Source of the DNA: Macrostomum lignano | Lineage: Eukaryota | Direction of reading: 5' to 3' | DNA length: 64,000 bases | NCBI GenBank assembly: GCA_002269645.1 | Contig: NIVC01001917.1 | Coordinates: 157,942 to 221,941 of the forward strand | In this document: positions 18,801 to 37,936 of the stretch, one piece after another | How the letters are laid out: every line of letters begins with the position of its first letter | Position numbering within the stretch: position 1 is the stretch's first letter | Notes under the pieces: model-generated | What the model was told of the DNA's origin: nothing | The model's input: only the letters and a program-made list of their open reading frames with translations | Database searches by the model: none | Translations under genes and position numbers: made by a program

Positions 18801-21800
18801 ATGCCGCAGACACGTTACTAAAGCCACCAACACTCCACCAACACAACCAGGCACACCTACGAGGAGATACAGAGCTCCAGCACACAGCACTGGACCCTGC
18901 AGCGGTACATGATCATGCGAGAATACACCGAACGCAGTCCGATAGCTCCGCCTCTAATTATAGTGTGGCACCTGGTCTTTGTACTGTACGTGCTCGTGCA
19001 GCGCTGTCGCGGACATCGGGTATTCGAAAACGGACCATTTAGTAAGTGCTTGGGTCGAGGTTACTGTTACTAAGGTGACAGTAGCAGCACTGTTTACTAC
19101 TAATATTCCCAACCTTTTGTGCATCAAAATATCAACCAGTGATACTACGAGTAGACTGCCAGATATATCACTTTCAAGTAAAGTTGTTGAAAAGCATAAC
19201 GTCTACTCTTTTTTCAGTAGTTTTCTGCACATTGGCACCTAAAGTTGATGTGGCAGCTAAAATTTCCTTCCTTCCTCCGGGTTTTCGGCCTCAGGAGCGT
19301 ACGGGGCATTTAACTCTATGTACACAAGTAAACACAGGACGGACGAAACTCAGCCTAGGGGGCAGGCCCAATCTACTTGTAGCTCAGCCAATGAGAGAAC
19401 AGTAAGGATCGAGAGAGGTCAAAGTTAGACGGACGAAGCCCAGCTTAGAGAGGGGGCCCAATCTGGCTCAGCCAATCAGAGAACAGTAAGATAGAGGTTA
19501 AAGTCAGACTAAGTAGCTTACCCAGACTGAGGGATCCTTGATTCGGAAAATTAAGCTTCCAATACAGACGCCTAGCTTTTAGACGTCTATGGCCAACAAT
19601 CTCAATATTCCAGAGCGCAGTTACTCTGGCAACAGGCAGCGAGAGCGTCAGCTGATGCAGTGGGAGCACATTCGTGCCGTTGAGTTTCTGCGCGGCCAGG
19701 ACGATCCGAAACGACGGCGCAAGTCGGACACCAGGACCATTGTCCGGGCTGGCGGGGTGGGCGGCAACGCCACCAACATGAAGAAGGAGCTGGACTCAGT
19801 TCAGGAAGGCCTTGGCGACCTGTTTCGCGATTCGATTCGCGAAGTCGAGGTGAATGTGAAGCGAATCGATAATGTTGAGCGACGGCTTGAGGAGCTGGCG
19901 GAGATGGTGGCCAATCTGGCCAAATCTATGGGTGAGAAGCATTACGAGGTGAGTCCGGGACTCGAGCCTGTGTTTCTAAGGATTGTGTCAGCTGGTTAGT
20001 GTCGGAGCTGTTGTGTCTGTTCTAGTGACTGTTGTGTCTGTTCTAGTGACTGTTGTGTCTGTTCTAGTGTCTCTCTGTTGTGTCTGTTCTAGTGACTGTT
20101 GTGTCTGTTCTAGTGTCTCTCTGTTGTGTCTGTTCTAGTGACTGTTGTGTCTGTTCTAGTGTCTCTCTGGTGTGTCTGTTCTAGTGACTGTTGTGTCTGT
20201 TCTAGTGTCTCTCTGGTGTGTCTGTTCTAGTGACTGTTGTGTCTGATCTAGTGTCTGTTGTGTCTGTTCTAGTGTCTCTCTGTTGTGTCTGTTCTAGTGA
20301 CTGTTGTGTCTGATCTAGTCTGTTGTGTCTGTTCTAGTGACTGTTGTGTCTGATCTAGTCTGTTGTGTCTGTTCTAGTGACTGTTGTGTCTGTTCTAGTG
20401 TCTCTCTGTTGTGTCTGTTCTAGTGACTGTTGTGTCTGATCTAGTGACTGGTGTGTCTGTTCTAGTGTCTCTCTGTTGTGTCTGTTCTAGTGACTGTTGT
20501 GTCTGTTCTAGTGACTGTTGTGTCTGTTCTAGTGACTGTTGTGTCTGTTCTAGTGTCTCTCTGGTGTGTCTGTTCTAGTGACTGTTGTGTCTGTTCTAGT
20601 GACTGTTGTGTCTGTTCTAGTGACTGTTGTGTCTGTTCTAGTGTCTCTGTTGTGTCTGTTCTAGTGACTGTTGTGTCTGTTCTAGTGACTGTTGTGTCTG
20701 TTCTAGTGACTGTTGTGTCTGTTCTAGTGACTGTTGTGTCTGTTCTAGTGACTGTTGTGTCTGTTCTAGTGACTGTTGTGTCTGTTCTAGTGACTGTTGT
20801 GTCTGTTCTAGTGACTATTGTGTCTCTTCTAGTGACAGTTGTGTCTGTTCTAGTGTCTGCTGTGTCTGTTCTAGTGTCTGTTGTGTCTGTTCTAGTGACT
20901 GTTGTGTCTGTTCTAGTGTCTGTTGTGTCTGTTCTAGTGACTGTTGTGTCTGTTCTAGTGACTGTTGTGTCTGATCTAGTGTCTGTTGTGTCTGTTCTAG
21001 TGTCTCTCTGGTGTGTCTGTTCTAGTGTCTGTTGTGTCTGTTCTTGTGACTGTTGGGTCTATTTCAGTATATTTTTTGTCTAATTTCTAGACTTTCTGTT
21101 GCTGTGAAGAATCAAAATGCTATTGAATAGCTGCTTGCATTATTCAGTTGGTTACAAACTCAGCCTTCGCAAATGCATGCTCACGATCGGATTCTGATCC
21201 CTCCCCCCCCAGATGGTGACCATCATCCAGCACCAGTACGAGCAGTCCGAGGAGCGCACCCGTCGCCAGGCCATGACGCTGTCCGGAGGCTCTCGCAGCG
21301 ATCGCCGGACCACATCGCAGCCGGTCGCGGTGGACGACGACTTGAGCGTCCATCTGGGCAGCGAGGACTCGACCGAGGAGGAGCAGCGGCCGCGAGTTTG
21401 GCGCGGCAAACTGCAGCACCACCAGCTGGCCAGGCTAGTGCCGTACCAGCTGGACTCCGGCTCGGCCAGAGTGGCCGAGATGCCTGAAGTCTGGAGCAGC
21501 TCCGACTGGCCGGACAGAGCCGAGGCGGCCGGAGCTTTTAACGGATTCGACTCGAGCAGCGGGTTCCACAGGGGCTCGCATGCTGGGCGGTAAGACATTT
21601 CGTCCCGAGTGGTACAGTGACACTTTGTCCCAGGGAAATCGGACATTTCGTCCCGAGTGGTACAGTGACACTTTGTCCCAGGGAAATCGGACATTACGTC
21701 CCAGACTTACTGGAACATATCTTCCGAGGGGCAATCGGACACTTTCGTCCCAGGGGCATTTGAAAATTTTTGGCGAAGACCAAATTTGTGCATAGCGGCG

Positions 21801-22873
21801 AAATTTAAATGCACAATGGTAGAAAATGTAGTGACTACATTGTGAATGTATTTCACAATTATAATAATTGAGAATGAAGTGTCGATGGATTACCATTTGA
21901 AGTTATTAAATTTTATAATCAGAAATATCAACACCATCGCTAGCAAAAGAAGATGCAGCTACTCAGTTTCACTTTTACAGGAATCAGCTAATTTAATATT
22001 TTTAACCGACTGTTTCTTTAGTGCTCATTTGTCATTCGTTTTGAATTTAGACGATGTCAGAGTTAAACAAAATATATCAATAAATATAATATACATGAGC
22101 CTCTTTGAGTTAATTAAAACTAAGTCAGTAATTTGAAGCAGAAATTGAAAGCAAATTTCAACAAGAAGTTGGAACCCCACCCACCGCCGCCGCCACCCAG
22201 CTACGTGACTGACGAGGCCGGCCGCCCGATGAACCCCAGCGGCAAGCCGGGGGCACCGGACCGCAACCGGCTGCCGCTGTGGGGTCCCAACCACTGCCTC
22301 CACTTGGCCGTCACTCGTTGGCGACGAGACGATCGTCAGAACATCGCCAAGAAGGCTGGACGGCCGGTGCTGCAGGTTGCGGCGGTGCTGGACCGTCGGG
22401 GCGGCATGCAGCTGCCGTGGTATCACGTCAAGCACTGCCTGCCGAGCTGTATCGGTCCAGCCTCCGTGTCAGCTTCATCGGCTTCTTCGTCGACAGTTGG
22501 CCAGTGCGGCCTGCAGAACCTGCTGCGGGCCTGGCTGCGGGAGCGCATCGAGGCTCTGGACGCTGGCAGGCTGGGCGCCAAACGGCTGCACATTCAGCAG
22601 GAGGCGGTCACCGCCGCGGCCTGCAGCACAGTGTACACCGGCTTGCTCGACGACAGGGTGAACGGCGACAACGCCTGGCTGGAGACCGACTTGGTTAATT
22701 TGCACGAACACTTCAATTATAATTTTGAAGACGACGTTGTGACCGAGTGCCTGCGCGAGGGCGGCAGCGGCGAGCGGGTTGCCTGGATCGACGTGGCCAA
22801 TCGGAGGCTGATGCGACAGTCGCACAACACTCTGCTGCGGCTGGTGGCGCAGCAGCACGGAGCGTACTTTTGA
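9898..22873 (+). CDS. TRPM: TRPM2-like cation channel (MHR, six TM, TRP box, coiled coil, NUDT9-H); 5' exons not found in the window
   Basis: Phase-consistent GT-AG exons: 9898(approx)-10568, 11332-11446, 11540-11626, 11985-12192, 12604-12832, 13115-13368, 14351-14444, 15742-16185, 17204-17399, 18197-18326, 18851-19041, 19614-19948, 21213-21589, 22201-22873 (~1333 aa). Motifs: LKIALALDRSD, CCQEMLDIIWKG, DFYFAPVVRF, EEIRQ/WNIMD, LGPKVVMIQNM, YFQVFGE, LLNLLIATFS, WTLQRY, WGPNH, NGDNAWLET. Confidence 0.93.
10898..11270. repeat. 47-bp intronic minisatellite, ~8 copies
   Basis: TTTCCACTCTAGATTCTAAGTCTAAAACTCCATGGTTTAGTCAGCAG with 47-bp spacing. Confidence 0.95.
11660..11952. repeat. 23-bp intronic minisatellite
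   Basis: GATGACCCACAGTGGAAGGTGCA, ~13 copies. Confidence 0.95.
12211..12578. repeat. (TCTAC)n microsatellite
   Basis: About 70 pentamers filling the intron. Confidence 0.98.
13390..14232. repeat. 16-bp intronic minisatellite TTGGGATATAGGCACA, changing to TTGGGAAGCAGACACA at the 3' end
   Basis: About 40 near-perfect copies, then a variant block from ~14080. Confidence 0.98.
14650..15670. repeat. 32-bp intronic minisatellite in two variant blocks, ending in 16-bp monomers
   Basis: TTCGAGCTTGTGTTGTTTTAAACTTGTGAGTC, then TTCGAGCTTGTGATGTTTTGATCTTGTGAAAT, then TTCGAGCTTGTGAAAT. Confidence 0.96.
16245..17105. repeat. Degenerate 16-bp minisatellite GACACATTGAGTCATA
   Basis: Most regular at 16800-17090. 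The units contain TGAGTCA. Confidence 0.9.
17565..18090. repeat. 43-bp intronic minisatellite, ~12 copies
   Basis: CAAAGATAATCATGCTAGTGACAGG(G/A)GCATCACACTGAGATGA. Confidence 0.95.
18338..18755. repeat. 21-22 bp intronic minisatellite CATTGTGGATAGCCTACCCCC
   Basis: Begins ~10 nt after the donor at 18327. Confidence 0.95.
19995..21050. repeat. 21-bp intronic minisatellite TGTTGTGTCTGTTCTAGTGAC
   Basis: Explains the VTVVSVL periodic ORF at 20478. Confidence 0.96.
21213..22873 (+). other. NUDT9-homology domain of the TRPM gene, with a degenerate Nudix box
   Basis: HHQLARLVPY, FNGFD..RGSHAGR|YVTDEAGRPMNPSG, WGPNH..VTRW and VYTGLLDDRVNGDNAWLET all align by eye to NUDT9. There is no GGxxxxGE or REFxEE. 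Confidence 0.85.
21594..21755. repeat. 48-bp repeat, ~3 copies, starting at the splice donor
   Basis: GGACATTTCGTCCCGAGTGGTACAGTGACACTTTGTCCCAGGGAAATC. Confidence 0.9.
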
Positions 22874-22894: not shown

Positions 22895-23388
22895 GTAGAG
22901 TGAGGCGGGTGAGTAGTGAGGTGGGAGAGGAGTGAGTTGAGTGAGGAGTGAGGCGGGTGAAGAGTGAGGTGGGTGAGGAGTGAGGTGGGTGAGGAGTAAG
23001 GCGGGTGAGAAGTGGGGCGGGTGAGAAGTGGGGCGGGTGAGAAGTGGGGCGGGTGAGGAGTGAGGTGGGTGAGGAGTAAGGCGGGTTAGAAGTGAGACGG
23101 GTGAGGAGTGAGGTGGGTGAGGAGTGAGGTGGGTGAGGAGTAAGGCGGGTGAGGAGTTAGGTGGGTGAGGAGTGAGGTGGGTGAGGAGTGAGGTGGGTGA
23201 GGAGTAAGGCGGGTGAGGAGTGAGGTGGGTGAGGAGTGAGGTGGGTGAGGAGTGAGTTGAGTGAGGAGTGAGGCGGGTGAGGAGTGAGGTGGGTGAGGAG
23301 TGAGGTGGGTAGAGTAAGACGGGTTAGGAGTGAGGTGGGTGCGGAGTGAGGTGGGTGAGGAGCGGGGTGGGTGCGGAGTGAGGTGGGC
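22895..23388. repeat. G-rich 16-bp minisatellite GAGGAGTGAGGTGGGT just after the TRPM stop
   Basis: About 30 copies. The first downstream AATAAA is at 23724. Confidence 0.95.
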
Positions 23389-23861: not shown

Positions 23862-23970
23862 GGGCGGTTGTGAAGCCGTATGCAGTAACTGTATGAGGAC
23901 ATGAACTCTATTGGATAGACACAAAGCTGCATTGGCCAATCAGTGTAGCTGAGGAATCGTAAATATAAAT
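23862..23970 (+). promoter_or_regulatory. Candidate Pol II core promoter of the secreted-peptide gene
   Basis: GC box GGGCGG at 23862, ATTGG at 23910, ATTGGCCAAT at 23931-23940 and TATAAAT at 23964-23970, ~100 nt before the GTAAGT donor at 24073. Confidence 0.65.
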
Positions 23971-24071
23971 GAAGGCTTTCCAGACTTCGACTTCGGCATC
24001 TATCGGAGTTGAATCAAAAGAGAAGACCAACTGCTGATCTTTCTACTACCGAAAATTTCCAAATCCTAACC

Positions 24072-27000
24072 AGTAAGTGAGCCGCTGTGTCGGTCTGTGT
24101 TGATCCCGAAAAGTTAAAATTTGTAATTAAATTTCCATTCATTTTTCAGTGTCCACGCGAAGCTCCCTACTGGCTTTAGTTCTGGGATTTTACCTGCTGC
24201 TGCAGCTGATAAGCGCCGCCCAGTACCAAGGTGACATTCCAGGTAGACACAGGCTCGTACGAGTATATTAATCTCGTGTTGTTGTTTTTAGTATCAGGAA
24301 TCTTTTTAACTCTATCCATTTTTTGTGCTGAGAATTTTCTTAACTACTACCATTTAAACAAATAACAAATACACGGATTAGATAAACAAATCTAAAACTT
24401 ACGTAAACAAATTTAACATTCAGATAAACAAATTTAACAATCATATTAAAAAATCTAACAACCAGATTAATAAATCTGACAATCAGATAAACAAATCTAA
24501 AAATTACGGAAACAAATTTAACATTCAGATAAACAAATTTAACAACCTGATAAACAAATCTAACAACCGAATGAACAAATCTAACAACCAGACAAACAAA
24601 TCTAACAACTAGATAAACATATATAACAATCAAATTAACAAATTTAACAATCACATAAACAAATCTAACAAACAGATTAACAGGTTAGAATTAGATATTA
24701 GAGTTATTTTAAAAATGTGCTAATGCAGATAAAAGTTGCCGGTCTTAAGTGGCACATCATAAATAAAAATCAATATTCTAATATACTAAAAATGAAATGC
24801 TTGGTTGCTTGCTTGTAATTGATTTTCTCTCGAACGGCTCAACCGATTTTCTTCAAACTTGCACCATTCGATCAGAAATTTTCCCGGGACGGTACATGCA
24901 TATTGGCTAAGAAATTGCTCAATGTTAAAGGGATTAAATATTCGAAAAACATGATTTTTTGCAAAGGTCAAGCAGCTCTTTCGACCTGAAATGCATTGTA
25001 AGAATGCTAGAGAAAAATCTGACTGGTTGAATTCTGATTCTGAAATAGATTGCATCACAATACACTTTATTTATCGTCTGTGTACTGGCTGAATTTGACA
25101 CTCAATTGAATTGCGTCACAGCTTTGAGGGTGAAAGTATAGTGCAGTACTGAATTTATATTACGTAACCATATTGTTAACTTTCATAGACACTGGTACTG
25201 ACTTGCCTAAGAAATTGATTATGTCATAACTGCTTCGCGTGACTTTTTACTCTACCTGACTTGGTGTGAGTGTTGAATTAATTATATAAGTGGTACAAAT
25301 TCACTGATAACTTCGATGAGAGCTAGCCTAGAGCTGAGCAGACCAGACTGCTAATGCAGCGACCTGGGTTCGAATCTAAGTAGTTTAAAAGTAGTAGTGT
25401 AAAATTTTTTATTAAAAGCTTTTATTAAAGGACTAAATAAAAACACTTAGATTACTGCACTCGATAAGCTAAGGATTATTGCTCTTGGCAAACCAAGGAA
25501 TACTGCACTCGATAAGCCAAGGATTATTGCTCTTGGCAAACCAAGGATTACTGCACTCGATAAGCCATGGATTATTGCTATTAATAAACCAAGGATTACT
25601 GCACTCGATAAGCCAAGGATTATTGCTATTAATAAACCATGAATTACTGCACTCGATAAGCCAAGGATTATTGCTATTAATAAACCAAGGATTACTGCAC
25701 TCATAAGCCATGGATTATTGCTATTAATAAACCAAGGATTACTGCACTCGATAAGCCAAGGACTATTGCTATTAATAAACCAAGGATTACTGCACTCAAT
25801 AAACCAAGGACTATTGCTCTTGGCAAACCAAGGATTACTGCACTCGATAAGCCAAGGACTATTGCTCTTGGCAAACCAAGGATTACTGCACTCGATAAGC
25901 CATGGATTATTGCTATTAATAAACCAAGGATTACTGCACTCGATAAGCCAAGGATTATTGCTATTAATAAACTAAGGATTACTGCACTCGATAAACCAAG
26001 GATTATTGCTATTAATAAACCAAGGATTATGCACTTGGCAAACCAAGGATTACTGCAATCGATAAGCCAAGGATTATTGCTATTAATAAACCAAGCATTA
26101 CTGCACTCAATAAACCAATGACTATTGCTATTAATAAACCAAGGATTACTGCACTCAAAAAACCAAGGACTATTGCTCTTGGCAAACCAAGGATTACTGC
26201 ACTCGATAAGCCAAGGATTATTGCTATTAATAAACCAAGGATTACTGCACTCGATAAACCAAGGATTATTGCTATTAATAAACCAAGGATTACTGCACTC
26301 GATAAGCCAAGGATTATTGCTATTAATAAACCAAGGATTATGCACTTGGCAAACCAAGGATTACTGCACTCGATAAGCCAAGGATTATTGCTATTAATAA
26401 ACCAAGGATTACTGCACTCAATAAACCAAGGACTATTGCTATTAATAAACCAAGGATTACTGCACTCAATAAACCAAGGACTATTGCTCTTGGCAAACCA
26501 AGGATTACTGCACTCGATAAGCCAAGGACTATTGCTCTTGGCAAACCAAGGATTACTGCACTCGATAAGCCATGGATTATTGCTATTAATAAACCAAGGA
26601 TTACTGCACTCGATAAGCCAAGGATTATTGCTATTAATAAACCAAGGATTACTGCACTCGATAAACCAAGGATTATGCACTTGGCAAACCAAGGATTACT
26701 GCACTCGATAAGCCAAGGATTATTGCTATTAATAAACCAAGGATTACTGCACTCAATAAACCAAGGACTATTGCTATTAATAAACCAAGGATTACTGCAC
26801 TCAATAAACCAAGGACTATTGCTCTTGGCAAACCAAGGATTACTGCACTCGATAAGCCAAGGACTATTGCTCTTGGCAAACCAAGGATTACTGCACTCGA
26901 TAAGCCATGGATTATTGCTATTAATAAACCAAGGATTACTGCACTCGATAAGCCAAGGATTATTGCTATTAATAAACCAAGGATTACTGCACTCGATAAG

Positions 27001-30000
27001 GCATGGATTATTGCTATTAATAAACCAAGGATTACTGCACTCGATAAGCCAAGGATTATTGCTATTAATAAACCATGAATTACTGCACTCGATAAGCCAA
27101 GGATTATTGCTATTAATAAACCAAGGATTACTGCACTCGATAAGCCATGGATTATTGCTATTAATAAACCAAGGATTACTGCACTCGATAGCCAAGGATT
27201 ACTGCGCTTGATAAGCTTGGCTACATGTATAGGATTATTTCTATCCAGGGATGCTTGCTATTTAGGGATTCTTGCTATGTGCAGGATGCTTGCTATCTGG
27301 AAGGATGCTTCTACATTATTTGGGGTATGCTTGCTATCTGCAAGATGCTTGCTATCTGCAAGATGCTTGCTATCTGCAGATGCTTGCTATCTGGGTGGAT
27401 GCTTGCTAGGAGTATTAGGGGATGCTTGCTACTGGGGGGATGCTTGCTGTCTTGGGAATATTTTCTATTTAGGGGTAATGACTAAAATTCATGAGAGCTA
27501 GCCTAGAGGTAAACAGACTAAACTGCTAAATGCAGGGACGATGGTTCGAATTTTTAGAGAGTAGAGTTTTTTTAATTAAAGCCTTTTAACGCCAAGACAA
27601 AAAAAATTATGGAAGCGTCATGTAAACAATCATACAAGCGTCATGTAAACAATCATAGAAGCGTCATGTAAACAATCATAGAAGCGTCATGTAAAAATCA
27701 TAGAAGCGTCATGTAAAAATCATAGAAGCGTAATGTAAACAATCATAGAAGCGTCATGTTAAAATCATAAAAGCGTCATGTAAACAATCATACAAGCGTC
27801 ATGTAAACAATCATAGAAGCGTCATGTAAAAAAATCATAGAAGCGTCATGTTAAAATCATAAAAGCGTCATAAAAAATCATAGAAGCGTCATGCAAGCAA
27901 TCATAGAAGCGTAATGTAAACAATCATAGAAGCGTCATGTTAAAATCATACAAGCGTCATGTAAACAATCATACAAGCGTCATGTAAACAATCATAGAAG
28001 CGTCATGTAAAAAAATCATAGAAGCGTCATGTTAAAATCATAGAAGCGTCATGTAAACAATCATAGAAGCGTCATGTAAACAATCATAGAAGCGTCATGT
28101 AAAAATCATAGAAGCGTCATGTAAAAATCATAGAAGCGTCATGTAAACAATCATAAAAGCGTCATGTAAACAATCATAGAAGCGTCATGTATACAATCAT
28201 AGAAGCGTCATGTAAACAATCATAGAAGCGTCATGTAAAAAATCATAGAAGCGTCATGTAAAAATCATAGAAGCGTCATGTAAAAATCATAGAAGCGTCA
28301 TGTAAAAATCATAGAAGCGTCATGTAAAAATCATAGAAGCGTCAGGTAAAAAATCATAGAAGCGTCATGTAAAAATCATAAAAGCGTCATGTAAAAAATC
28401 ATAGAAGCGTCATGTAAACAATCATACAAGCGTCATGTAAACAATCATAGAAGCGTCATGTAAAAATCATACAAGCGTCATGTAAACAAGCATAGAAGCG
28501 TCATGAAAAAATTATAGAAGCCTCATATAAAAACTAATGAAAGTGTGTCATTTAAAAAATTAAGAAGCATCATGGAAGAATAAAAGAAGCGTAACGTAAA
28601 AATCAAAAGAAGCGTCATGTCAGACATGAAAGAAATGTCATATAAAAATTAAATGAAGCTATAGTACAGTGCTGTGCTGGGGAGAATTACTGAGACGTCA
28701 AGGCTCACAGAGAATAACTGAGATTGCAGGGGGGTTTCTGAGATGTTAAAGCAAAAGTCAGAAGCTACTTCAAAGTACATGTACTTTACTTAAGTTTTTT
28801 ATTGCATTCTTTGTTGGCTTGCCACGGTGGGGGGGCGCTGATAGAAGAAGAGTCATGTAAAAATAAAAGGAGCACTATGTATACATAAAATAAAAGTCAT
28901 GTCAAAGTTAAAAGATTCATTTGGGAATTGCTACGATGTCAAAGCTTGGAGGGAATCGTTATAGTGCTGTGATTCTTAAAGAAGGAATCACTTAAATGCC
29001 AAGGCTTAGGGAAGAAGAATTGCTGTGATTTCAAGGCTTTAGGTTGGGTGAAAGTTAGGTTTACGTCAGGTTTGGGTTGAGGGTTAGATTTTAGCGCGTT
29101 TCAAGGTTAACAGGGGATTTTTTAGATTTCAAGGTTTATGGGGGGCATCGCTGACATGTCAAGGCTTACGAGGGGAATCTATCTATCTATCTATAGCTGA
29201 GATGTCAAGGCTCACGGGGGAATAAATGAGATGTCAAGGCTAATGTCAGAAGCTACATGTAGTTTATTGGAAAAAAGTTATTACATTATTTGTTGGCTCC
29301 TCACGGGAGGGATCGCTGATAGAAAAAGCGTAATGTAAAAAAAAAAGAAGCTTCATGTCAAAGTTAAGAGATTCATTTGGGAATCCCTACGATGTCGAGG
29401 CTTGCAGGGAATCGCTATAATGCTGTAGTAGTGCTATAGACTCTTAGAGAGAATTACTGAAATTTCAATGCTTTAGGGTTAGGGTTAGGGTTAGGGTTAG
29501 AAAATAGACAGATTTTTTAAGATTTCAAGGCTTGTGGGAGCATTGCTGAGATGTCAAGGGGGGAGTTGATATGTTAAGGCTTGTGGGGGGATTGCTGACA
29601 TGTCAAGGCTTACAAGGGTACTGGTAGCGTACTGAAGCATACTGGTAGAAGTAGCTCTGAAAGAAGGCAAGTATGGTTGAATTTCAATGTCTGTTATAAA
29701 ATTCTGCACAAACATGTTTTATTGGTACATAAGCCTGGAATTAAAATGAGAATTCGATTCCTAGCCCCCCTCCCTAAGAATTTTTTTTCATTTAAAAGGA
29801 TTCGTCCCTTGCTTATTGGCCACCCCGAAGGCCATTTTTTATCAAAAATGATAAAAATAATTTTTATCAAACACGTTGACATATACAGGGCTCTAAACTA
29901 AAAACTGTAAAAAGTTGATAGTTTTGTTTTACCTAAAATGCGTTATTAACGATCTCCAAAAATTCCTATTTTAAGCTTAAGCTTAAGAAAAACACTTAAA

Positions 30001-30390
30001 GTACTCCTGCTAAAAGGTATATTATATTAGACGAATATTAATTATTTCTGCTCCCCGAAGGGGGGCAAAACTTTAGCTAGTACTACTAACTAATATCTAA
30101 CACTACTATTCAAACGCTACAATATCAGCCATTCCTTTCAAACGACTCCAGATGGGCTGCTGGCGGACCCGGATGGTTCGGACAGCTCGGTGCAGTCCAA
30201 AACGGGCCTGAACCGCGCGGAGCTGCCCGTGGTGCTCCTCGTCCGGGATGGAGCCGACAGCAACAACGAAGGCGCCGACTCAGCGCTGAGGCGCATTGTG
30301 AACGAGTTCCGTAAACGGGTGTCCGCCTATCTGGACAGGCGAAGCCAACCGAGCGCTCAGAAACGGCTGTCCGAGTTTATTGGAAAATAA
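24072..30390 (+). CDS. Secreted neuropeptide precursor-like protein (~106-110 aa), candidate EFL(G)amide/TRH-type
   Basis: Coding parts: A at 24072, 24150-24230 (or the in-phase alternative donor at 24242), and 30152-30390. Protein: MSTRSSLLALVLGFYLLLQLISAAQYQ(GDIP)DGLLADPDGSDSSVQSKTGLNRAELPVVLLVRDGADSNNEGADSALRRIVNEFRKRVSAYLDRRSQPSAQKRLSEFIGK*. It has a signal peptide, an acidic spacer, RR/RKR/RR/KR sites and a C-terminal G-K amidation signal. Phases match across both introns. Confidence 0.75.
24350..24680. repeat. Degenerate 21-bp A-rich minisatellite ATAAACAAATCTAACAACCAG
   Basis: Periodic AAACAAAT(C/T)TAAC. Confidence 0.85.
25316..25385 (+). mobile_element. Degenerate tRNA-derived head (related copy at 27490-27560)
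   Basis: ATGAGAGCTAGCCTAGAG..CAGAC..ACTGCTAA(A)TGCAG.GAC..GGTTCGAAT occurs in both copies, with A and B boxes but no acceptor stem. Confidence 0.55.
25447..27210. repeat. Hierarchical satellite: 24-bp monomers, 48-bp dimers and ~310-335 bp higher-order repeats
   Basis: Monomers AACCAAGGATTACTGCACTCGATA, AGCCAAGGATTATTGCTATTAATA and ...GCTCTTGGCA. The fusion junction GGATTATGCACTTGGCA recurs at ~26025, ~26336 and ~26671. Confidence 0.95.
27250..27460. repeat. Degenerate copy of the GATGCTTGCTATCTG minisatellite
   Basis: Same unit as 1-1075. Confidence 0.85.
27610..28520. repeat. 22-24 bp minisatellite ATCATAGAAGCGTCATGTAAA(C)A
   Basis: About 40 copies, with a variable A-run. Confidence 0.96.
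28660..29640 (-). repeat. Inverted copies of the 5526-6745 composite repeat, with an embedded (TTAGGG)4 at 29473-29500
   Basis: GCTGAGATGTCAAGGCT units and AGCTACATGT..TTGTTGGCT..CGCTGATAG heads. An internal ~450-bp duplication (CATGTCAAAGTTAA.AGATTCATTTGGGAAT) lies at ~28898 and ~29354. Confidence 0.8.
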
Positions 30391-30704
30391 CAATCTGGAT
30401 TACTCAATAGCTCGGATGAGTCGGGCTGCTGCGGCGAGAGAGGCAGTCGAGAGAGACTTCACAGCTCTCCTACATTCCAACGAGTTTCGTTTTTCTCCTA
30501 AATGAGCACTTTGAAACTTGAAAAATAAGCAATCGAACTTTATGTATCTCATATTAGCAAAAGAACAGTCTAAATAGAAATCCATTTGGAGTGTCCGAAG
30601 CCCCGACACCGAAAGCAATTGTTTTCCGAGTGCTGCAGTAAAATATTTCTTCTTTGTTATAATTTAATATCCAGATTCCTATTGGGAAATGTTTTACGTG
30701 TAAT

Positions 30705-32775
30705 CATGTACGGTCCCATGAGTGCGCATGTACTCATGTCTGTTGTGTACAATCATGTACAGTCACATGAGTGCGCATGTACTCATGTCTGTTGTGTACA
30801 ATCATGTACAGTCACATGAGTGTGCATGTACTCATGTCTGCTGTGTACAATCATGTACAGTCACATGAGTGCGCATGTACTCATGTCTGCTGTGTACAAC
30901 CATGTAAGTCCCATGAGTGCGCATGTACTCATGTCTGCTGTGTACAATCATGTACAGTCCAATGAGTGCGCATGTACTCATGTCTGCTGTGTACAATCAT
31001 GTACAGTCCCATGAGTGCGCATGTACTCATGTCTGCTGTGTACAACCATGTAAGTCCCATGAGTGCGCATGTACTCATGTCTGCTGTGTACAATCATGTA
31101 CAGTCCCATGAGTGCGCATGTACTCATGTCTGCTGTGTACAATCATGTACAGTCACATGAGTGTGCAGGTACTCATGTCTGCTGTGTACAAGCATGTACA
31201 GTCCCATGAGTGTGCATGTACTCATGTCTGCTGTGTACAAGCATGTACAGTCCCATGAGTGTGCATGTACTCATGTCTGCTGTTTACAAGCATGTACAGT
31301 CACATGAGTGTGCATGTACTCATGTCTGCTGTGTACAATCATGTACAGTCCCATGAGTGTGCATGTACTCATGTCTGCTGTTTACAAGCATGTACAGTCA
31401 CATGAGTGTGCATGTACTCATGTCTGCTGTGTACAAGCATGTACAGTCACATGAGTGTGCAGGTACTCATGTCTGCTGTGTACAATCATGTACAGTCACA
31501 TGAGTGTGCAGGTACTCATGTCTGCTGTGTACAATCATGTACAGTCACATGAGTGTGCAGGTACTCATGTCTGCTGTGTACAATCATGTACACTCACATG
31601 AGTGTGCAGGTACTCATGTCTGCTGTGTACAAGCATGTACAGTCCCATGAGTGTGCATGTACTCATGTCTGCTGTGTACAAGCATGTACAGTCCCATGAG
31701 TGTGCATGTACTCATGTCTGCTGCTTACAAGCATGTACAGTCACATGAGTGTGCATGTACTCATGTCTGCTGTGTACAATCATGTACAGTCCCATGAGTG
31801 TGCATGTACTCATGTCTGCTGTTTACAAGCATGTACAGTCACATGAGTGTGCATGTACTCATGTCTGCTGTGTACAAGCATGTACAGTCACATGAGTGTG
31901 CAGGTACTCATGTCTGCTGTGTACAATCATGTACAGTCACATGAGTGTGCAGGTACTCATGTCTGCTGTGTACAATCATGTACAGTCACATGAGTGTGCA
32001 GGTACTCATGTCTGCTGTGTACAATCATGTACACTCACATGAGTGTGCAGGTACTCATGTCTGCTGTGTACAATCATGTACAGTCACATGAGTGTGCAGG
32101 TACTCATGTCTGCTGTGTACAATTATGTACAGTCACATGAGTGTGCAGGTACTCATGTCTGCTGTGTACAAGCATGTACAGTCACATGAGTGTGCAGGTA
32201 CTCATGTCTGCTGTGTACAATCATGTACAGTCACATGAGTGTGCAGGTACTCATGTCTGCTGTGTACAAGCATGTACAGTCACATGAGTGTGCAGGTACT
32301 CATGTCTGCTGTGTACAATTATGTACAGTCACATGAGTGTGCAGGTACTCATGTCTGCTGTGTACAATCATGTACAGTCACATGAGTGTGCAGGTACTCA
32401 TGTCTGCTGTGTACAAGCATGTACAGTCACATGAGTGTGCAGGTACTCATGTCTGCTGTGTACAATCATGTACAGTCACATGAGTGTGCAGGTACTCATG
32501 TCTGCTGTGTACAAGCATGTACAGTCACATGAGTGTGCAGGTACTCATGTCTGCTGTGTACAATTATGTACAGTCACATGAGTGTGCAGGTACTCATGTC
32601 TGCTGTGTACAAGCATGTACAGTCACATGAGTGTTCAGGTACTCATGTCTGCTATGTACAAGCATGTACAGTCACATGAGTGTGCAGGTACTCATGTCTG
32701 CTGTGTACAATTATGTACAGTCACATGAGTGTGCAGGCACTCATGTCTGCTGTGTACAATTATGTACAGTCACAT
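30705..32775. repeat. 49-bp satellite, ~42 copies, with internal palindromes
   Basis: CATGAGTGTGCA(T/G)GTACTCATGTCTGCTGTGTACAATCATGTACAGTCA; no spacers between units. Confidence 0.98.
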
Positions 32776-33262
32776 ATGAGAGTAAATGTACTCATTTCTA
32801 CGCACCTGCAGAGACTCGGGGAAATATATGTCTCTCGATGTGCTTATTTGTTCAAGTAGCCAATTGGCAATTAAAAAAACAGAGAGACACTGCAGACGCC
32901 CCTCGCCAGTAGCCGCCAGAAATGGCGAGCGAAATTCTCAAGCCCTTTCGTCGGCTCTGAAAAATCTGCGATAAGAAATGGCCAGCTTTCTCAATTGTTA
33001 AGTGCTACGAGCTGCGCAAGAAGCCTTCGTAAAAGACGCGGAGGGGGGGGGGGTTGCGATGCGACGTGAAGCGCGTACAATTAATTCTGGAGATGCAGAC
33101 AGGCTATTGTTGCACTGCAGGCAAGGGTCGCCACCTATTGATGTTTCAGAGAGGAGAGGACGGCGCTCTCAGTTGTGAATATTAATGCAGCAGACAGCTA
33201 CACTGTGTATGCAAGACTGCAGTGCAACTTCAAACTGCACTCAGCACTCAGGTTGCCTCGGC

Positions 33263-36200
33263 ATGAATCTAAACGAGCCGAGGCTGAGCTTCGAGTACCG
33301 GGTCTCGAAGAAGATCGCCGAGCTCACCCAGGTGGTGCACATGCTGTTCAAACGGCAGCACGAGCGCGAGTGCGAGCTGGCAGCCGTCCGCTCGGCCTAC
33401 GAGAGCGAGCTCGAACTCACTCGGAAGGACGCCGCCGAGCGTCTGGAGGCCCAGGAGCTGCTGGCTCGCGACAGGGAAGAAACGGCGAAGCGTCTGGACG
33501 AGGACCTGGCTAAACGCCGGCGGGAATTCGACGAACAGCGGACGAAACTCGAACGGAAACTGGCCGACCGAGACACGCAGCTGGCCAGGCTGCGGGAGAG
33601 CCGCGACCAGATGAAGAAGATGCTAGAAGAGGCTGGCCGAGAGATCGACAGCATGCGCAGTAGCGTCACTCTTGAGCTGTCCGAGAAAGGCGAACGGAGC
33701 CGCCTGGTGGAGGAGGAGAACGCCGGACTGCGCGAGAAGCTGGCCAAGCTGTCCTACAAGCTGGCCGAGCGAGAGCGAGTGGCCGACGAGCTGTCCAAGG
33801 AGCTGGACTCGGCCAAGAAGAGGGCACAGAAGTGGAACAAAGAGTGCAGCGAGCTGCAGGCGTACGCCGAGGAGCAGGCAAAGGCGGCCGAGGCGCTCCG
33901 GCTGAAGAACAAGCAGATTGAGAACGAGCTGAGAACCATGAAGCGCGACGCCAACAGGCGCCTATCCGAGGGGCTGGTGCAGCCGCTGGGCGGCCGAGGG
34001 GACAGGGCGGCTCAGAGTCAGGTCTGCTCCAGTTCGATATCTGAATTGCCTTTTTTCTGGAATTCGATGCTCGATCGAGCATTAGCATATGTAAAAGTTC
34101 ACTCTGAACGCAAGCTCACTGATCACCGCTACCCTCCCCAGTTGTTCACTGAGTCACCTGCTACCCTCCCCAGTTGTTCACTGAGTCACCTGCTACCCTC
34201 CCCAGTTGTTCACTGAGTCACCTGCTATCCTCCCCAGTTGTTCACTGAGTCACCCGCTACCCTCCCCAGTTGTTCACTGAGTCACCTGCTATCCTCCCCA
34301 GTTGTTCACTGAGTCACCCGCTACCCTCCCCAGTTGTTCACTGAGTCACCTGCTACCCTCCCCAGTTGTTCACTGAGTCACCTGCTACCCTCCCCAGTTG
34401 TTCACTGAGTCACCTGCTACCCTCCCCAGTTGTTCACTGAGTCACCTGCTACCCTCCCCAGTTGTTCACTGAGTCACCTGCTACCCTCCCCAGTTGTTCA
34501 CTGAGTCACCTGCTATCCTCCCCAGTTGTTCACTGAGTCACCCGCTACCCTCCCCAGTTGTTCACTGAGTCACCTGCTATCCTCCCCAGTTGTTCACTGA
34601 GTCACCCGCTACCCTCCCCAGTTGTTCACTGAGTCACCTGCTACCCTCCCCAGTTGTTCACTGAGTCACCTGCTACCCTCCCCAGTTGTTCACTGAGTCA
34701 CCTGCTACCCTCCCCAGTTGTTCACTGAGTCACCTGCTATCCTCCCCAGTTGTTCACTGAGTCACCCGCTACCCTCCTCAGTTGTTCACTGAGTCACCCG
34801 CTACCCTCCCCAGTTGTTCACTGGGTCACCCGCTACCATTCCTAAGTTGTTCACTGGGTCACCCGCAACCATTCCTGAGTTGTTCACTGGGTCAGCCGCT
34901 ACCATTCCTGACTTGTCCACTGGGTCACCCGCTACCCTGTCAAACACCTTCACAAACAACCAAAAAACAGACGGAGCGCCAACTGGAGGAGGAATGCGAG
35001 CGACTGCAGCGAGAGCTGACAAAGTACAAACTGGAGCTGGCCAACAGAGACCTGAATCTGAACCGGGTCTTCAACGAACAGTCGCCCATGATTGTGGACC
35101 TCAAAGCTGGCCGCATCGCAGCGGCTGGTGGACAGCAGCCGACGCTGCCGACGCCGATGTCCACCAGGGACAGCGCTGGACGGTCGTTCCGATCCGCTGG
35201 GTTGGGCCGGGAAAAAACTTTTCACTATGTTGTCAGCCAGGACTACGAGGAGCCTCCGACACAGGTGAGGGGAGGGGAGATGATGATTCTCAGTCTCAAT
35301 TGTGATGATTCTCAGTCTCAATTGTGATGATTCTCAGTCTCAATGATGATTAATCTCAGTCTCAATTGTGATGATTCTCAGTCTCAATGATGATTAATCT
35401 CAGTCTCAATGATGATGAATCTCAGTCTCAATGATGATGAATCTCAGTCTCAATGATGATGAATCTCAGTCTCAATGATGATGAATCTCAGTCTCAATGA
35501 TGATGATTCTCAGTCTCAATGATGATGATGATTCTCAGTCTCAATGATGATTAATCTCAGTCTCAATGATGATTAATCTCAGTCTCAATGATGATTAATC
35601 TCAGTCTCAATGATGATTAATCTCAGTCTCAATTGTGATGATTCTCAGTCTCAATGATGATTAATCTCAGTCTCAATGATGATGAATCTCAGTCTCAATG
35701 ATGATGAATCTCAGTCTCAATGATGATGATTCTCAGTCTCAATGATGATGATTCTCAGTCTCAATGATGATTAATCTCAGTCTCAATGATGATGAATCTC
35801 AGTCTCAATGATGATGATGATTCTCAGTCTCAATGATGATGATGATTCTCAGTCTCAATGATGATTAATCTCAGTCTCAATGATGATTAATCTCAGTCTC
35901 AATGATGATGAATCTCAGTCTCAATGATGATGAATCTCAGTCTCAATGATGATTAATCTCAGTCTCAATTGTGATGATTCTCAGTCTCAATGATGATTAA
36001 TCTCAGTCTCAATGATGATGAATCTCAGTCTCAATGATGATGAATCTCAGTCTCAATGATGATGAATCTCAGTCTCAATGATGATGAATCTCAGTCTCAA
36101 TGATGATGATTCTCAGTCTCAATGATGATGATGATTTTCAGTCTCAATGATGATGATGATTCTCAGTCTCAGTGATGATTCTCAGTTTGAATGATGATGT

Positions 36201-37600: not shown

Positions 37601-37936
37601 TTAGCCAGCTATGCACAGCAAGCCAGGCCGCGGGCTCCAGCACAAGGAGAGCAGCAGATGTCCTGCAGCGATATCGATTGCGCTGAGTCTGGCAAATTCA
37701 ACTTCAGCGGATAAATAAACTGAAGCATGGAAGAATGCAGGCAGCCAATTAATTAGGCAGCTGAGGGCGACTGAGACAAGCCAGGTGCTAGCGCCATCTC
37801 CTAGATAATTGGGAATGGCACCGGCTGGGGTCCAAAGCCTAGCAACTGTCCTCTCTTCTGTTGCGTCGGTGTAGACTTTTGGACAGCGACGTTCATTTCC
37901 ACATCTTTTAGATAACGAAAACACAAAAATGATCAC
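37601..37936 (-). pseudogene. Possible decayed RNase H fragment of a retroelement
   Basis: VYTDAT...WLPAF..ASVYLSAE loosely resembles the non-LTR RNase H pattern (YTDGS ... SVFxAE). The later DS motif is absent and no RT is nearby. Confidence 0.25.

What the first reader, a model, noticed from the sequence alone, without database searches (positions are those of the whole stretch)
24072..30390. Hidden neuropeptide precursor ending in KR-LSEFI-G-K: a candidate flatworm EFL(G)amide/TRH-type system
Seen: the ORF track misses this gene. Splicing 24072 + 24150-24230/24242 + 30152-30390 gives a signal peptide, an acidic pro-region, four basic cleavage sites and a terminal LSEFI-G-K, behind a GC/CCAAT/TATA promoter. 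Established: a G before a basic residue is the amide donor, and protostome TRH-type peptides include annelid FSEFLGamide and arthropod EFLamides with an E-F-L core. Inference: LSEFIamide is an I-for-L variant of that family, and IVNEF, VSAYLD and SQPSAQ may be co-released peptides.
Basis: partly seen in the sequence, partly recalled or inferred. Interest (0 to 1): 0.8.

Follow-up and report, generated by a model that had tools for sequence, protein, structure and literature searches.

The report
Unannotated neuropeptide gene encoding LSEFIamide
A small three-exon gene missed by ORF finders, in an unidentified invertebrate genome, very probably encodes a secreted precursor whose main product is the amidated pentapeptide LSEFI-NH2, a new member of the known fulicin/EFLGamide and F[V/L/I]amide neuropeptide group.

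Summary
Joining A(24072), 24150-24230 (or -24242) and 30152-30390 gives a 106- or 110-aa protein. It has a signal peptide, an acidic pro-region, basic sites exactly 8 residues apart, and the end KR-LSEFI-G-K-stop.

Several results argue against chance:
- Both coding exons use the window's own codon bias only in the proposed frame.
- The only TATA box in the window with both a CCAAT and a GC box lies just upstream.
- Exon 2 has no ATG of its own, so the split start codon is needed.

A search of 1.8 billion proteins returned one neuropeptide precursor, with 13 LREFFamide and 2 VREFIamide copies, which also ends ...REFIGK-stop. Our VSAYLD-RR-SQPSAQ-KR-LSEFIG aligns to two of its 16-residue units, so the gene looks like a decayed multi-copy precursor.

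Published precursor sets contain FSEFIamide in slug and bivalve fulicin-type precursors (the EFLGamide/TRH type). They also contain LREFIamide in the bivalve Solemya, in a precursor resembling the PRQFVamide type. Each differs from LSEFIamide at one residue.

The TRH-type assignment is therefore plausible but not the only option. "Flatworm" could not be tested. This is a new member of a known kind.

The parts
23862..23867 (+). GC box (GGGCGG)
23910..23940 (+). CCAAT-box cluster: ATTGG at 23910 and ATTGGCCAAT at 23931-23940
23964..23970 (+). TATA box (TATAAAT). It is the only one of 42 TATAAA sites in the window with both a CCAAT and a GC box upstream.
23995..24072 (+). Exon 1: 5' UTR without any ATG, ending in the A of the split start codon. 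The 5' end is inferred as about 30 nt after the TATA box.
   Evidence: the start site is an inference
24073..24149 (+). Intron 1 (77 nt), GTAAGT...TTTTTCAG, interrupting the ATG
24150..24242 (+). Exon 2: TG of the start codon plus the signal peptide (residues 1-24 end at 24220, predicted cut SAA|Q). There are two phase-1 donors, at 24230 and 24242, and the longer form adds GDIP.
24243..30151 (+). Intron 2 (5.9 kb), AT-rich and largely minisatellite arrays (24380-24682, 25450-27205, 27249-27408, 27601-28649). No credible extra exon was found.
30152..30288 (+). Exon 3, first part: acidic pro-region DGLLADPDGSD...GADSAL
30289..30366 (+). Exon 3, decayed repeat region: RR-IVNEF-RKR-VSAYLD-RR-SQPSAQ-KR. 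Dibasic sites are exactly 8 codons apart. VSAYLD sits in the register of a former peptide copy.
30367..30381 (+). LSEFI, the predicted mature peptide
30382..30390 (+). Gly (amide donor), Lys (removed by carboxypeptidase), stop TAA
30637..30642 (+). AGTAAA followed by a T-rich stretch, a possible variant poly(A) signal. There is no AATAAA or ATTAAA before the minisatellite array at 30702.
   Evidence: inference

Best explanation
This is a real, unannotated three-exon gene for a neuropeptide precursor of 106 or 110 residues.

Proposed mechanism (steps 1-2 rest on the sequence; steps 3-6 are inferred from established prohormone biochemistry):
1. Transcription starts about 30 nt after the TATA box at 23964.
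2. Removal of a 77-nt intron assembles the start codon (A|TG).
3. The 24-residue signal peptide directs the protein into the secretory pathway.
4. Prohormone convertases cut after RR, RKR, RR and KR.
5. A carboxypeptidase removes the basic residues.
6. Peptidylglycine alpha-amidating monooxygenase converts LSEFI-Gly into LSEFI-NH2, which acts on a G-protein-coupled receptor.

The gene is a decayed descendant of a multi-copy precursor built from 16-residue units (peptide-dibasic-spacer-dibasic). Only the last copy keeps the E-F core and the amidation glycine.

It belongs to the protostome group that joins fulicin / EFLGamide / EFLamide (ligands of TRH-receptor orthologues) with the F[V/L/I]amide and PRQFVamide peptides.

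My sub-probabilities are:
- real expressed precursor, about 0.85;
- LSEFIamide as its active product, about 0.75;
- fulicin/EFLGamide (TRH-type) identity, about 0.45-0.5;
- PRQFVamide / F[V/L/I]amide identity, about 0.3.
For: Gene model:
- The splice sites, phases and open frame all fit.
- Codon bias is positive only in the proposed frame for both coding exons, and GC steps up at exon 3.
- The TATA+CCAAT+GC arrangement is unique in the window.
- There is no ATG in the 5' UTR exon and no in-frame ATG upstream of exon 2, where a stop lies at 24128. The split ATG puts Met directly before a classic n-h-c signal sequence.
- The terminal amidation motif occurs only here in a long open frame.

Homology:
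- phmmer of exon 3 against 1.84 billion proteins returned three hits. Two are ARM-repeat proteins. The third, P0007 (E 1.5e-4), is a precursor with a signal peptide, 13 KR-LREFFG-KR copies and 2 KR-VREFIG-K(R) copies.
- The real reading frame of P0007 ends ...KRVREFIGK-TGA.
- BLASTP aligns KRVSAYLDRRSQPSAQKRLSEFIGK with KRLREFFGKRGDPSAEKRLREFFGK at 52% identity, pairwise E 1e-6.
- 24-nt units in the same 48-nt register are 12/24 identical, against 5-9/24 for the other pairs.

Family context from papers:
- Fulicin is called an EFLGamide-type peptide (PMC8398477); the Achatina fulicin precursor encodes KR-FNEFVG-KR (PMC6425005 supplement).
- Oyster peptides are (F/Y)S(E/D)FL(M)amide, with a shared core E-[L/F]-[L/F/V]; these peptides activate TRH-receptor orthologues (PMC8398477).
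- FSEFIG occurs in Deroceras fulicin and in Ennucula. The Achatina fulicin precursor ends ...PEFIGK* (PMC6425005 supplement).
- The nemertean Nipponemertes encodes PFSEFVG beside AFSEFLGG, and nemertean F[V/L/I]amide precursors end ...VSRNFIGK* (PMC8557429 supplement).
- Single-copy EFLamide precursors exist in Hemiptera and locust (PMC7294237).
Against: - No transcript evidence could be consulted.
- No orthologue from a related species was found. The protein databases available hold almost no animal proteomes, so this absence says little.
- There is no canonical poly(A) signal between the stop codon and the downstream minisatellite array, only AGTAAA at 30637.
- Both intron-2 donors are only moderate matches to the donor consensus.
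- Only one intact peptide copy remains, which would also fit a decaying gene.
- Position 1 is Leu. It is aromatic in spiralian fulicin/EFLGamide peptides and Gly in the decapod and Pyrrhocoris EFLamide peptides seen here.
- The single database relative is of the R-containing PRQFVamide-like type rather than the fulicin type.
- Its E-value is helped by its many repeats.
Confidence: 0.72

Rival explanations
1. The gene and peptide are real, but the peptide belongs to the PRQFVamide / F[V/L/I]amide family (relatives of the molluscan PRQFVamide, LRDFVamide and Mytilus inhibitory peptides). It would then act on a different receptor, such as the FLamide-receptor type or one still unknown, and not on a TRH-receptor orthologue.
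For: - The only neuropeptide hit in 1.84 billion proteins is P0007 (LREFFamide/VREFIamide), including spacer similarity PSAQKR / VSAQKR / PSAEKR.
- P0007 resembles Solemya LREFV/LREFIamide and Deroceras 'prqfvamide 2' LRDFVamide.
- Position 1 is Leu, as in those peptides.
- Nemertean F[V/L/I]amide precursors end ...NFIGK*.
- FLamide, FVamide and FIamide peptides are described as ubiquitous in lophotrochozoans, with a non-TRH receptor in Platynereis (PMC8557429).
Against: - Most members of that assemblage seen here carry a basic residue at position -4 or -3 (LREFI, LRDFV, PRQFV, RHFL, SRNFI). LSEFI has Ser there and no positive charge.
- S/T/N/A-E-F is the signature of fulicin, EFLGamide and GSEFLamide.
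- FSEFIamide itself is a fulicin-precursor product.
- In Capitella, the oyster and Tubulanus the two peptide types are encoded by one gene, so the families may not be cleanly separable.
Confidence: 0.3
2. The locus is a decaying or dead remnant of a multi-copy neuropeptide gene, or a chance assembly, and yields little or no functional peptide.
For: - Two of three repeat positions have lost the E-F core and the Gly.
- There is no canonical poly(A) signal.
- The intron-2 donors are moderate.
- No orthologue or transcript evidence was obtainable.
Against: - The frame is intact through all three exons, and the signal peptide is intact.
- Codon bias is preserved at the level of neighbouring genes.
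- The split-ATG splice sites are precise (GTAAGT / TTTTTCAG).
- The promoter arrangement is unique in the window.
- The last copy keeps every processing signal.
- Single-copy precursors of this family are functional and expressed in insects (PMC7294237).
Confidence: 0.13
3. The internal dibasic sites are not cut. The product would then be a long C-terminally amidated helical peptide (29 residues, IVNEF...LSEFI-NH2, or longer) of the CRH/DH44/egg-laying-hormone or secretin-like kind, acting on a class-B receptor. My own lead for this was the resemblance of ...QKRLSEFI-GK* to the CRH precursor end ...NRKLMEII-GK*, recalled from memory.
For: - The architecture fits: signal peptide, acidic spacer, and a single amidated peptide at the very C-terminus followed by GK-stop.
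- Internal basic pairs are tolerated in the lobster DH44 sequence given in PMC4696782.
Against: - There is no Pfam CRF, Hormone_2 or other family match even at E up to 10.
- No solved peptide-hormone chain matched at E up to 10.
- A Pro sits in the middle (SQPSAQ).
- At 29 residues it is shorter than the one DH44 sequence seen here, 45 residues in lobster; from memory this family runs about 36-47 residues.
- The exact 8-residue spacing of dibasic sites and the alignment to two units of a multi-copy precursor are explained far better by short-peptide processing.
Confidence: 0.04
4. Exon 3 is not part of a secreted precursor but a terminal exon of another protein, for example an armadillo-repeat protein.
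For: phmmer hits P0006 (E 1.1e-6) and P0008 (E 9.8e-4) are ARM-repeat proteins. P0008 is from the oomycete Nothophytophthora, and the P0006 cluster holds unnamed marine-metagenome sequences. Their IPPLVALVRDGTDAQKE..AL units resemble ELPVVLLVRDGADSNNEGADSAL.
Against: - Only one 26-residue unit matches, and the scores are summed over 4-5 repeats of the subject.
- No other ARM-like exon is nearby.
- The rest of the exon is dibasic-rich and ends in an amidation signal.
- An in-phase signal-peptide exon with its own promoter lies upstream, and no better partner exon exists.
Confidence: 0.03

Closest known systems
Fulicin / EFLGamide (FSE peptide) / arthropod EFLamide (GSEFLamide): the protostome TRH-type neuropeptides
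   Same: - Short amidated peptide with the core x-(S/N/A/T)-E-F-(L/V/I)-NH2, flanked by KR and G-K/R.
- FSEFIamide (Deroceras fulicin precursor, Ennucula) shares SEFI-NH2 exactly.
- It is a pentapeptide, like fulicin (FNEFVamide).
- The Achatina fulicin precursor also ends ...EFIGK-stop.
- Single-copy precursors occur in Hemiptera and locust.
   Different: - Position 1 is Leu, not Phe/Tyr/Trp (spiralians) or Gly (decapods and Pyrrhocoris).
- Only one intact copy remains.
- No companion MIP/PxFVamide exons (as in oyster, Capitella, Tubulanus) or Proh-4 exons (as in insects) were found in the window.
- The receptor is untested.
PRQFVamide / F[V/L/I]amide precursors (Solemya LREFV/LREFIamide, Deroceras LRDFVamide, brachiopod REFVamide, nemertean ...VSRNFIGK*), including the database hit P0007 (LREFFamide x13, VREFIamide x2)
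   Same: - The only detectable sequence relative is of this type.
- Position 1 is Leu, with the E-F-I-NH2 ending.
- The 16-residue unit structure matches, with acidic spacers such as xxxSAQ-KR.
- The precursor ends ...EFIGK-stop.
   Different: - These peptides carry Arg at position 2, where LSEFI has Ser.
- They are highly multi-copy.
- P0007 is a single-exon gene, whereas ours has a split start codon and a 5.9-kb intron.
CRH / DH44 / egg-laying-hormone precursors
   Same: One amidated peptide at the extreme C-terminus, followed by GK-stop and preceded by an acidic spacer. The tail has the form basic-basic-L-x-E-hydrophobic-I.
   Different: There is no profile or sequence match. The peptide would be too short, it contains a Pro, and it shows periodic dibasic sites.

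Membership tests
Fulicin / EFLGamide / EFLamide (protostome TRH-type) precursor | N-terminal signal peptide on a small secreted precursor | tested here: met
   MSTRSSLLALVLGFYLLLQLISAA|Q has a charged n-region, a 17-residue hydrophobic core (Kyte-Doolittle 2.7) and a small-residue c-region. No SignalP run was available.
Fulicin / EFLGamide / EFLamide (protostome TRH-type) precursor | Peptide preceded by a dibasic site and followed by Gly plus basic residue(s), giving C-terminal amidation | tested here: met
   KR-LSEFI-G-K-stop
Fulicin / EFLGamide / EFLamide (protostome TRH-type) precursor | Core x-(S/N/A/T)-(E/D)-F-(L/V/I)(-G)-NH2; PMC8398477 gives the shared core as E-[L/F]-[L/F/V] | tested here: met
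   S-E-F-I. The same SEFIG is present in Deroceras fulicin ARS01371.1 and in Ennucula. SEFVG is present in Nipponemertes. Ile is not in the published core set but occurs in listed members.
Fulicin / EFLGamide / EFLamide (protostome TRH-type) precursor | Aromatic residue (F/Y/W) before the S/N in spiralians, or Gly in the decapod and Pyrrhocoris peptides | tested here: not met
   Position 1 is Leu. Compare FSEFLG, YSEFLG, WSEFLG, FNEFVG, AMGSEFL and TVGTEFL.
Fulicin / EFLGamide / EFLamide (protostome TRH-type) precursor | Several paracopies per precursor (usual, not universal) | tested here: not met
   There is one intact copy plus decayed positions (VSAYLD, GADSAL). One or two copies are documented in Hemiptera and locust.
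Fulicin / EFLGamide / EFLamide (protostome TRH-type) precursor | Shares its 5' exons with another peptide gene by alternative splicing (MIP in oyster and Capitella, F[V/L/I]amide in Tubulanus, Proh-4 in insects) | tested here: not met
   No other ORF with two or more amidation motifs, or with PxF[VI]G, was found in any frame of the 64-kb window. An exon outside the window cannot be excluded.
Fulicin / EFLGamide / EFLamide (protostome TRH-type) precursor | Peptide activates a TRH-receptor orthologue | not testable with these tools
   This needs a receptor assay. The genome outside the window is not available.
Fulicin / EFLGamide / EFLamide (protostome TRH-type) precursor | Orthologues with the same motif in related species | tested here: inconclusive
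   There were no hits in the word-indexed protein search or in the metagenome scans. Those collections hold almost no animal genomes.
PRQFVamide / F[V/L/I]amide precursor | Peptides ending F-(V/L/I)-NH2 between dibasic sites | tested here: met
   The peptide ends ...F-I-NH2. The family description is in PMC8557429.
PRQFVamide / F[V/L/I]amide precursor | Basic residue two or three places before the Phe (LREFI, LRDFV, PRQFV, RHFL, SRNFI) | tested here: not met
   LSEFI has Ser and no basic residue.
PRQFVamide / F[V/L/I]amide precursor | Detectable sequence similarity to a member | tested here: met
   P0007 scores E 1.5e-4 against 1.84 billion proteins. Pairwise BLASTP gives E 1e-6 and 52% identity over 25 residues spanning two units. 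The score is helped by repeats.
PRQFVamide / F[V/L/I]amide precursor | Many tandem paracopies | tested here: not met
   There is one intact copy.
CRH / DH44 / ELH family | Amidated peptide of about 36-47 residues (range from memory) matching the family profile (Pfam CRF) | tested here: not met
   There is no Pfam hit at E up to 10 and no solved-structure peptide hit at E up to 10. The longest uncut candidate after RR is 29 residues and contains a Pro.

The most novel reading that the evidence does not exclude
If the window does come from a flatworm, or from another lineage in which no EFLGamide/fulicin-type peptide has been described, LSEFIamide would be the missing ligand of that lineage's TRH-receptor-like GPCR. 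The Schmidtea and Schistosoma prohormone lists examined here contain no F[ILV]-G-K/R precursor. The ligand would be encoded by a relic single-copy gene that standard annotation misses because its start codon is split by an intron. The same kind of gene structure could then hide other small neuropeptide genes in that genome.
Probability: 0.2. Interest if true: 0.55.

Novelty: new member of a known kind. Interest (0 to 1): 0.4.

Why it matters
- It gives a concrete, cheap target: a 5-residue amidated peptide, calculated [M+H]+ 607.345, suitable for peptidomics, antibody staining and receptor de-orphanisation.
- It shows how a split start codon plus a long repeat-filled intron can hide a small secreted-peptide gene from ORF-based and homology-based annotation.
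- It is a single-copy, partly decayed form lying between the fulicin/EFLGamide type (xSEF[L/V/I]amide) and the PRQFVamide type (LREF[V/I]amide). It is therefore a useful test of whether these two groups, already encoded by one gene in some spiralians, share receptors or ancestry.
- It does not open a new kind of biology.

Tried and rejected
- **Word-indexed protein search.** The precursor gave no hit. The same search with the TRPM2-like exon gave none, and with the CLASP exon only five metagenome fragments of at most 51% identity. That database therefore cannot identify the organism or supply animal orthologues.
- **Rfam and tRNA scans.** Nothing was found in the window.
- **Pfam scan of the precursor.** Only a meaningless weak hit.
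- **PDB sequence search of the C-terminal 57 residues.** Only a designed ankyrin at E 0.7.
- **CRH/DH44-like long-peptide idea (my own).** Rejected for lack of any profile match, and because of the 8-residue dibasic periodicity.
- **Full-text searches.** SEFIamide, EFIamide, EFFamide and LREFF found no neuropeptide paper. Two searches were swamped by unrelated words.
- **Tick hypothesis.** Raised because of GC 45.5%, GC-rich codons and many repeats. A literature search gave nothing usable.
- **Flatworm check.** The Collins 2010 prohormone supplement holds no F[ILV]GK precursor, and a Macrostomum literature search was uninformative.
- **Other exons.** A search for further peptide exons or alternative signal-peptide exons found only minisatellite artefacts.
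- **Metagenome scans.** The scan with exon 3 gave no relative. The scan with the DNA pattern for KR-xx-EFIGK-stop gave 120 matches, all unrelated and apparently bacterial protein ends, several ending ...EKRxPEFIGK*.
- **Poly(A) signals.** No canonical signal lies between the stop codon and the 30702 minisatellite array; the first ATTAAA is at 32870.


Full report
**1. Setting**

The window is animal nuclear DNA with 45.5% GC. It has AT-rich introns full of minisatellites and GC-rich exons (GC3 0.6-0.85).

Upstream on the + strand lies a TRPM2-like channel gene. One exon, at 9903-10649, matches TRPM2. Its last coding exon, 22133-22873, encodes the end of the NUDT9-homology domain. An AATAAA follows at 23724.

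On the - strand, from about 41.6 to at least 54.8 kb, lies a CLASP gene. Its TOG2 exon is about 62% identical to human CLASP1 by my count of the alignment, and two further exons give weak HEAT/TOG hits. That level of identity points to a non-vertebrate animal.

The organism could not be identified. The large protein collections available hold almost no animal proteomes. The finding sits in the 10-kb gap between the TRPM2-like gene and a coiled-coil ORF at 33185.

**2. The observation**

- CCA|GTAAGT at 24072;
- a 77-nt intron;
- TTTTTCAG|TG at 24150, so the start codon is split A|TG;
- phase-1 donors at 24230 and 24242;
- the acceptor CTCCAG|AT at 30152;
- TAA at 30388-30390.

The product is MSTRSSLLALVLGFYLLLQLISAAQYQ(GDIP)DGLLADPDGSDSSVQSKTGLNRAELPVVLLVRDGADSNNEGADSALRR-IVNEF-RKR-VSAYLD-RR-SQPSAQ-KR-LSEFI-G-K-stop.

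**3. Is it more than chance?**

- *Codon usage.* I built a codon table from eight long-ORF exons in the window (TRPM2-like, CLASP and three others). Exon 3 scores +45 bits (0.58 per codon, within the 0.20-0.96 range of the training exons) in the proposed frame. It scores 8 or less in the five other frames. Exon 2 scores +9.8, against negative values in the other two forward frames. Only 0.65% of all 78-codon windows reach the exon-3 score.
- *Composition.* GC steps from 0.25-0.35 to 0.53-0.67 at exon 3.
- *Start codon.* Exon 2 has no in-frame ATG of its own, because a stop lies at 24128. The presumed 5' UTR exon has no ATG after the TATA box. The split ATG is therefore the first start codon and sits directly before a textbook signal sequence.
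- *Acceptor.* The AG at 30150-30151 is the only one in the open stretch 30094-30151 that preserves the frame.
- *Promoter.* Of 42 TATAAA sites on both strands, only the one at 23964 has a CCAAT box and a GC box upstream.
- *Terminal motif.* Dibasic-x3-12-G-K/R-stop occurs three times in six frames, and only here inside a long open frame. EF[LIVMF]G[KR] occurs once.
- *Intron 2.* It is mostly tandem arrays and contains no credible extra exon or alternative signal-peptide exon. Its 5.9-kb length resembles the gaps of 3-5 kb between the TRPM2-like exon ORFs.
- *Weak points.* Both intron-2 donors are moderate. No AATAAA or ATTAAA lies between the stop codon and the array at 30702, only AGTAAA at 30637 followed by a T-rich run.

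**4. Relatives**

The word-indexed search found nothing. The exhaustive phmmer search of exon 3 against 1.84 billion representatives gave three hits.

Two hits are armadillo-repeat proteins. P0008 is from the oomycete Nothophytophthora, and the P0006 cluster holds unnamed marine-metagenome sequences. Their repeat resembles ELPVVLLVRDGADSNNEGADSAL in our pro-region. I regard this as a repeat-inflated coincidence.

The third hit, P0007 (E 1.5e-4), lies on a 496-kb eukaryotic contig in an ENA assembly (ERZ25071447). Its real reading frame (L001:10001-10999) ends at TGA; the 381-residue gene call had read through that stop. The protein is a 332-residue neuropeptide precursor with a signal peptide, 13 copies of KR-LREFFG-KR and 2 copies of KR-VREFIG-K(R). 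It ends ...HKRVREFIGK-stop, the same kind of end as ours.

BLASTP aligns our KRVSAYLDRRSQPSAQKRLSEFIGK with two consecutive 16-residue units, KRLREFFGKRGDPSAEKRLREFFGK, at 52% identity and pairwise E 1e-6. This places VSAYLD where a peptide copy used to be and SQPSAQ where a spacer is.

Our last 40 residues consist of 8-residue blocks, each ending in a dibasic pair: GADSAL-RR, IVNEFR-KR, VSAYLD-RR, SQPSAQ-KR, LSEFIG-K. At the DNA level, blocks in the same 48-nt register are 12/24 identical, against 5-9/24 for all other pairs.

The gene therefore looks like a worn-down multi-copy precursor in which only the last copy still has E-F and the amidation glycine. IVNEF, VSAYLD and SQPSAQ are then by-products rather than designed co-transmitters.

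**5. What the literature says about such peptides**

- Fulicin is grouped with the EFLGamide peptides (PMC8398477), and the Achatina fulicin precursor encodes KR-FNEFVG-KR (PMC6425005 supplement).
- Oyster (F/Y)S(E/D)FL(M)amides, annelid FSEFLGamide and nematode ELFamides form the protostome TRH-type family. It has the core E-[L/F]-[L/F/V] and activates TRH-receptor orthologues (PMC8398477; PMC7294237).
- Decapods have AMGSEFLamide and AVGSEFLamide (PMC4696782).
- In Hemiptera and locust the precursor carries one or two copies and arises from an alternative 3' exon of Prohormone-4.
- In oyster and Capitella the fulicin/EFLGamide peptides come from the same gene as the Mytilus-inhibitory (PxFV/Iamide) peptides. 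In the nemertean Tubulanus the FSE and F[V/L/I]amide precursors share their 5' part.
- The mollusc supplement of PMC6425005 contains KR-FSEFIG-KR in the Deroceras fulicin precursor and in the bivalve Ennucula. The Achatina fulicin precursor ends ...HYPEFIGK-stop.
- The nemertean Nipponemertes encodes PFSEFVG next to AFSEFLGG.
- On the other side, the same data sets show LREFVamide and LREFIamide in Solemya, LRDFVamide in Deroceras 'prqfvamide 2', and REFVamide in brachiopods. Nemertean F[V/L/I]amide precursors end ...KRVSRNFIGK-stop.
- P0007 clearly belongs with this second group. For it, the known annelid receptor (the FLamide receptor) is not a TRH receptor, and a second receptor type is suspected (PMC8557429).

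**6. Assignment**

LSEFIamide differs by one residue from FSEFIamide (fulicin type, position 1) and by one residue from LREFIamide (PRQFVamide type, position 2).

I give slightly more weight to the fulicin/EFLGamide/EFLamide reading, for two reasons:
- A small hydroxyl or amide residue before E-F is conserved across molluscs, annelids, nemerteans and arthropods.
- Most PRQFVamide and F[V/L/I]amide peptides seen here carry a basic residue there, which LSEFI lacks.

The only detectable sequence relative, the Leu at position 1 and the spacer similarity point the other way. Since both peptide types can be encoded by one gene in spiralians, they may share ancestry. The honest statement is membership of this joint group, with the receptor open. 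No companion exon of the other type exists in the window.

**7. Mechanism**

Shown by sequence: the promoter elements, the splice signals, the frame, the signal peptide, the dibasic sites and the Gly-Lys end.

Inferred from established prohormone biochemistry:
- signal-peptidase cleavage after SAA, leaving an N-terminal Gln that could cyclise;
- convertase cleavage after RR, RKR, RR and KR;
- carboxypeptidase trimming;
- amidation of LSEFI-Gly;
- regulated secretion and action on a GPCR.

Speculative: a D-residue at position 2, since fulicin contains a D-amino acid.

**8. Rivals**

- *A dead or dying gene.* This cannot be excluded without transcripts. The intact frame, codon bias, splice sites and promoter argue against it.
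- *A long CRH/DH44-like amidated peptide.* This was my own lead, from the tail ...QKRLSEFI-GK. It has no profile or structure-database support and is contradicted by the periodic processing sites.
- *An ARM-repeat exon.* This is not credible.

**9. Verdict**

The planarian and schistosome prohormone lists examined contain no F[ILV]-G-K/R precursor. If the source is a flatworm, the peptide would be new for that phylum.

It is a new member of a known kind and a useful annotation catch, of moderate interest.

Noticed in passing
window 9903-22873 (+): A TRPM2-like cation-channel gene. Exon ORFs lie at 9903-10649 (matches the TRPM2 N-terminal region in PDB), 15781-16221 and 19589-19999 (read by eye as TRPM transmembrane and C-terminal parts, not searched), and 22133-22873 (end of the NUDT9-homology domain, stop at 22871-22873). 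AATAAA lies at 23724, only 240 bp before the neuropeptide gene's TATA box.
   Followed up: partly
window 41627-54764 (-): A CLASP (CLIP-associating protein) gene. The TOG2 exon is about 62% identical to human CLASP1 by my count of the alignment, and two further exons (41627-42160, 47437-47844) give weak HEAT/TOG hits. This level of identity argues for a non-vertebrate animal and seems high for a fast-evolving lineage.
   Followed up: partly
window 13-1157, 12100-12840, 13100-14270, 22898-23387, 25450-27205, 27601-28649, 30702-32775, 37930-38800, 56090-56840, 57466-58884 and others: Minisatellite arrays are very dense (measured units of 16-49 bp, up to 45 copies in 22.8-33.2 kb). They fill introns and intergenic DNA and generate most of the long spurious ORFs in the six-frame list.
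   Followed up: partly
window 30226-30303 (+): The pro-region ELPVVLLVRDGADSNNEGADSALRRI resembles one armadillo-repeat unit (IPPLVALVRDGTDAQKE..AL). Matching proteins are P0008 from the oomycete Nothophytophthora and the unnamed marine-metagenome cluster of P0006 (E 1.1e-6 and 9.8e-4, summed over 4-5 repeats). It is probably a coincidence but is unexplained.
   Followed up: partly
L001:10001-10999 (ENA ERZ25071447 ctg86701): An apparently unnamed single-exon precursor with 13 LREFFamide and 2 VREFIamide copies, resembling Solemya and Deroceras PRQFVamide-type precursors. The stored gene call (381 aa) reads through the real TGA stop. Neighbouring ORFs (e.g. L001:15025-15420) look, from memory, like a repeat family seen in marine invertebrates, so the contig is probably molluscan.
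   Followed up: partly
published precursors (PMC6425005, PMC8557429 supplements), L001 and window 30376-30390: Precursors labelled as different families all end with a last copy ...F-I-G-K-stop: Achatina fulicin ...PEFIGK*, Deroceras fulicin ...PGFIGK*, nemertean F[V/L/I]amide ...SRNFIGK*, P0007 ...REFIGK*, and this gene ...SEFIGK*. A shared terminal copy may be a trace of common ancestry of these families.
   Followed up: no
L066, L085, L103, L106, L114, L116, L120 (metagenome contigs): Several unrelated proteins of about 265-290 residues, probably bacterial and looking to me like enoyl-CoA hydratases (not checked), end ...EKRxPEFIGK*. The terminal hexapeptide alone is therefore not diagnostic of a neuropeptide.
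   Followed up: no
window 3138-4299 (+): Overlapping ORFs with a weak FkbM-type methyltransferase match (Pfam Methyltransf_21, 22.1 bits, just under the 22.7 cut-off). The two frames suggest an intron or a frameshift around 3680-4050.
   Followed up: no
window 33185-35327 (+): A long coiled-coil ORF (343 aa) followed by a further ORF after a short repeat. It has no Pfam or PDB match and is the downstream neighbour of the neuropeptide gene.
   Followed up: partly
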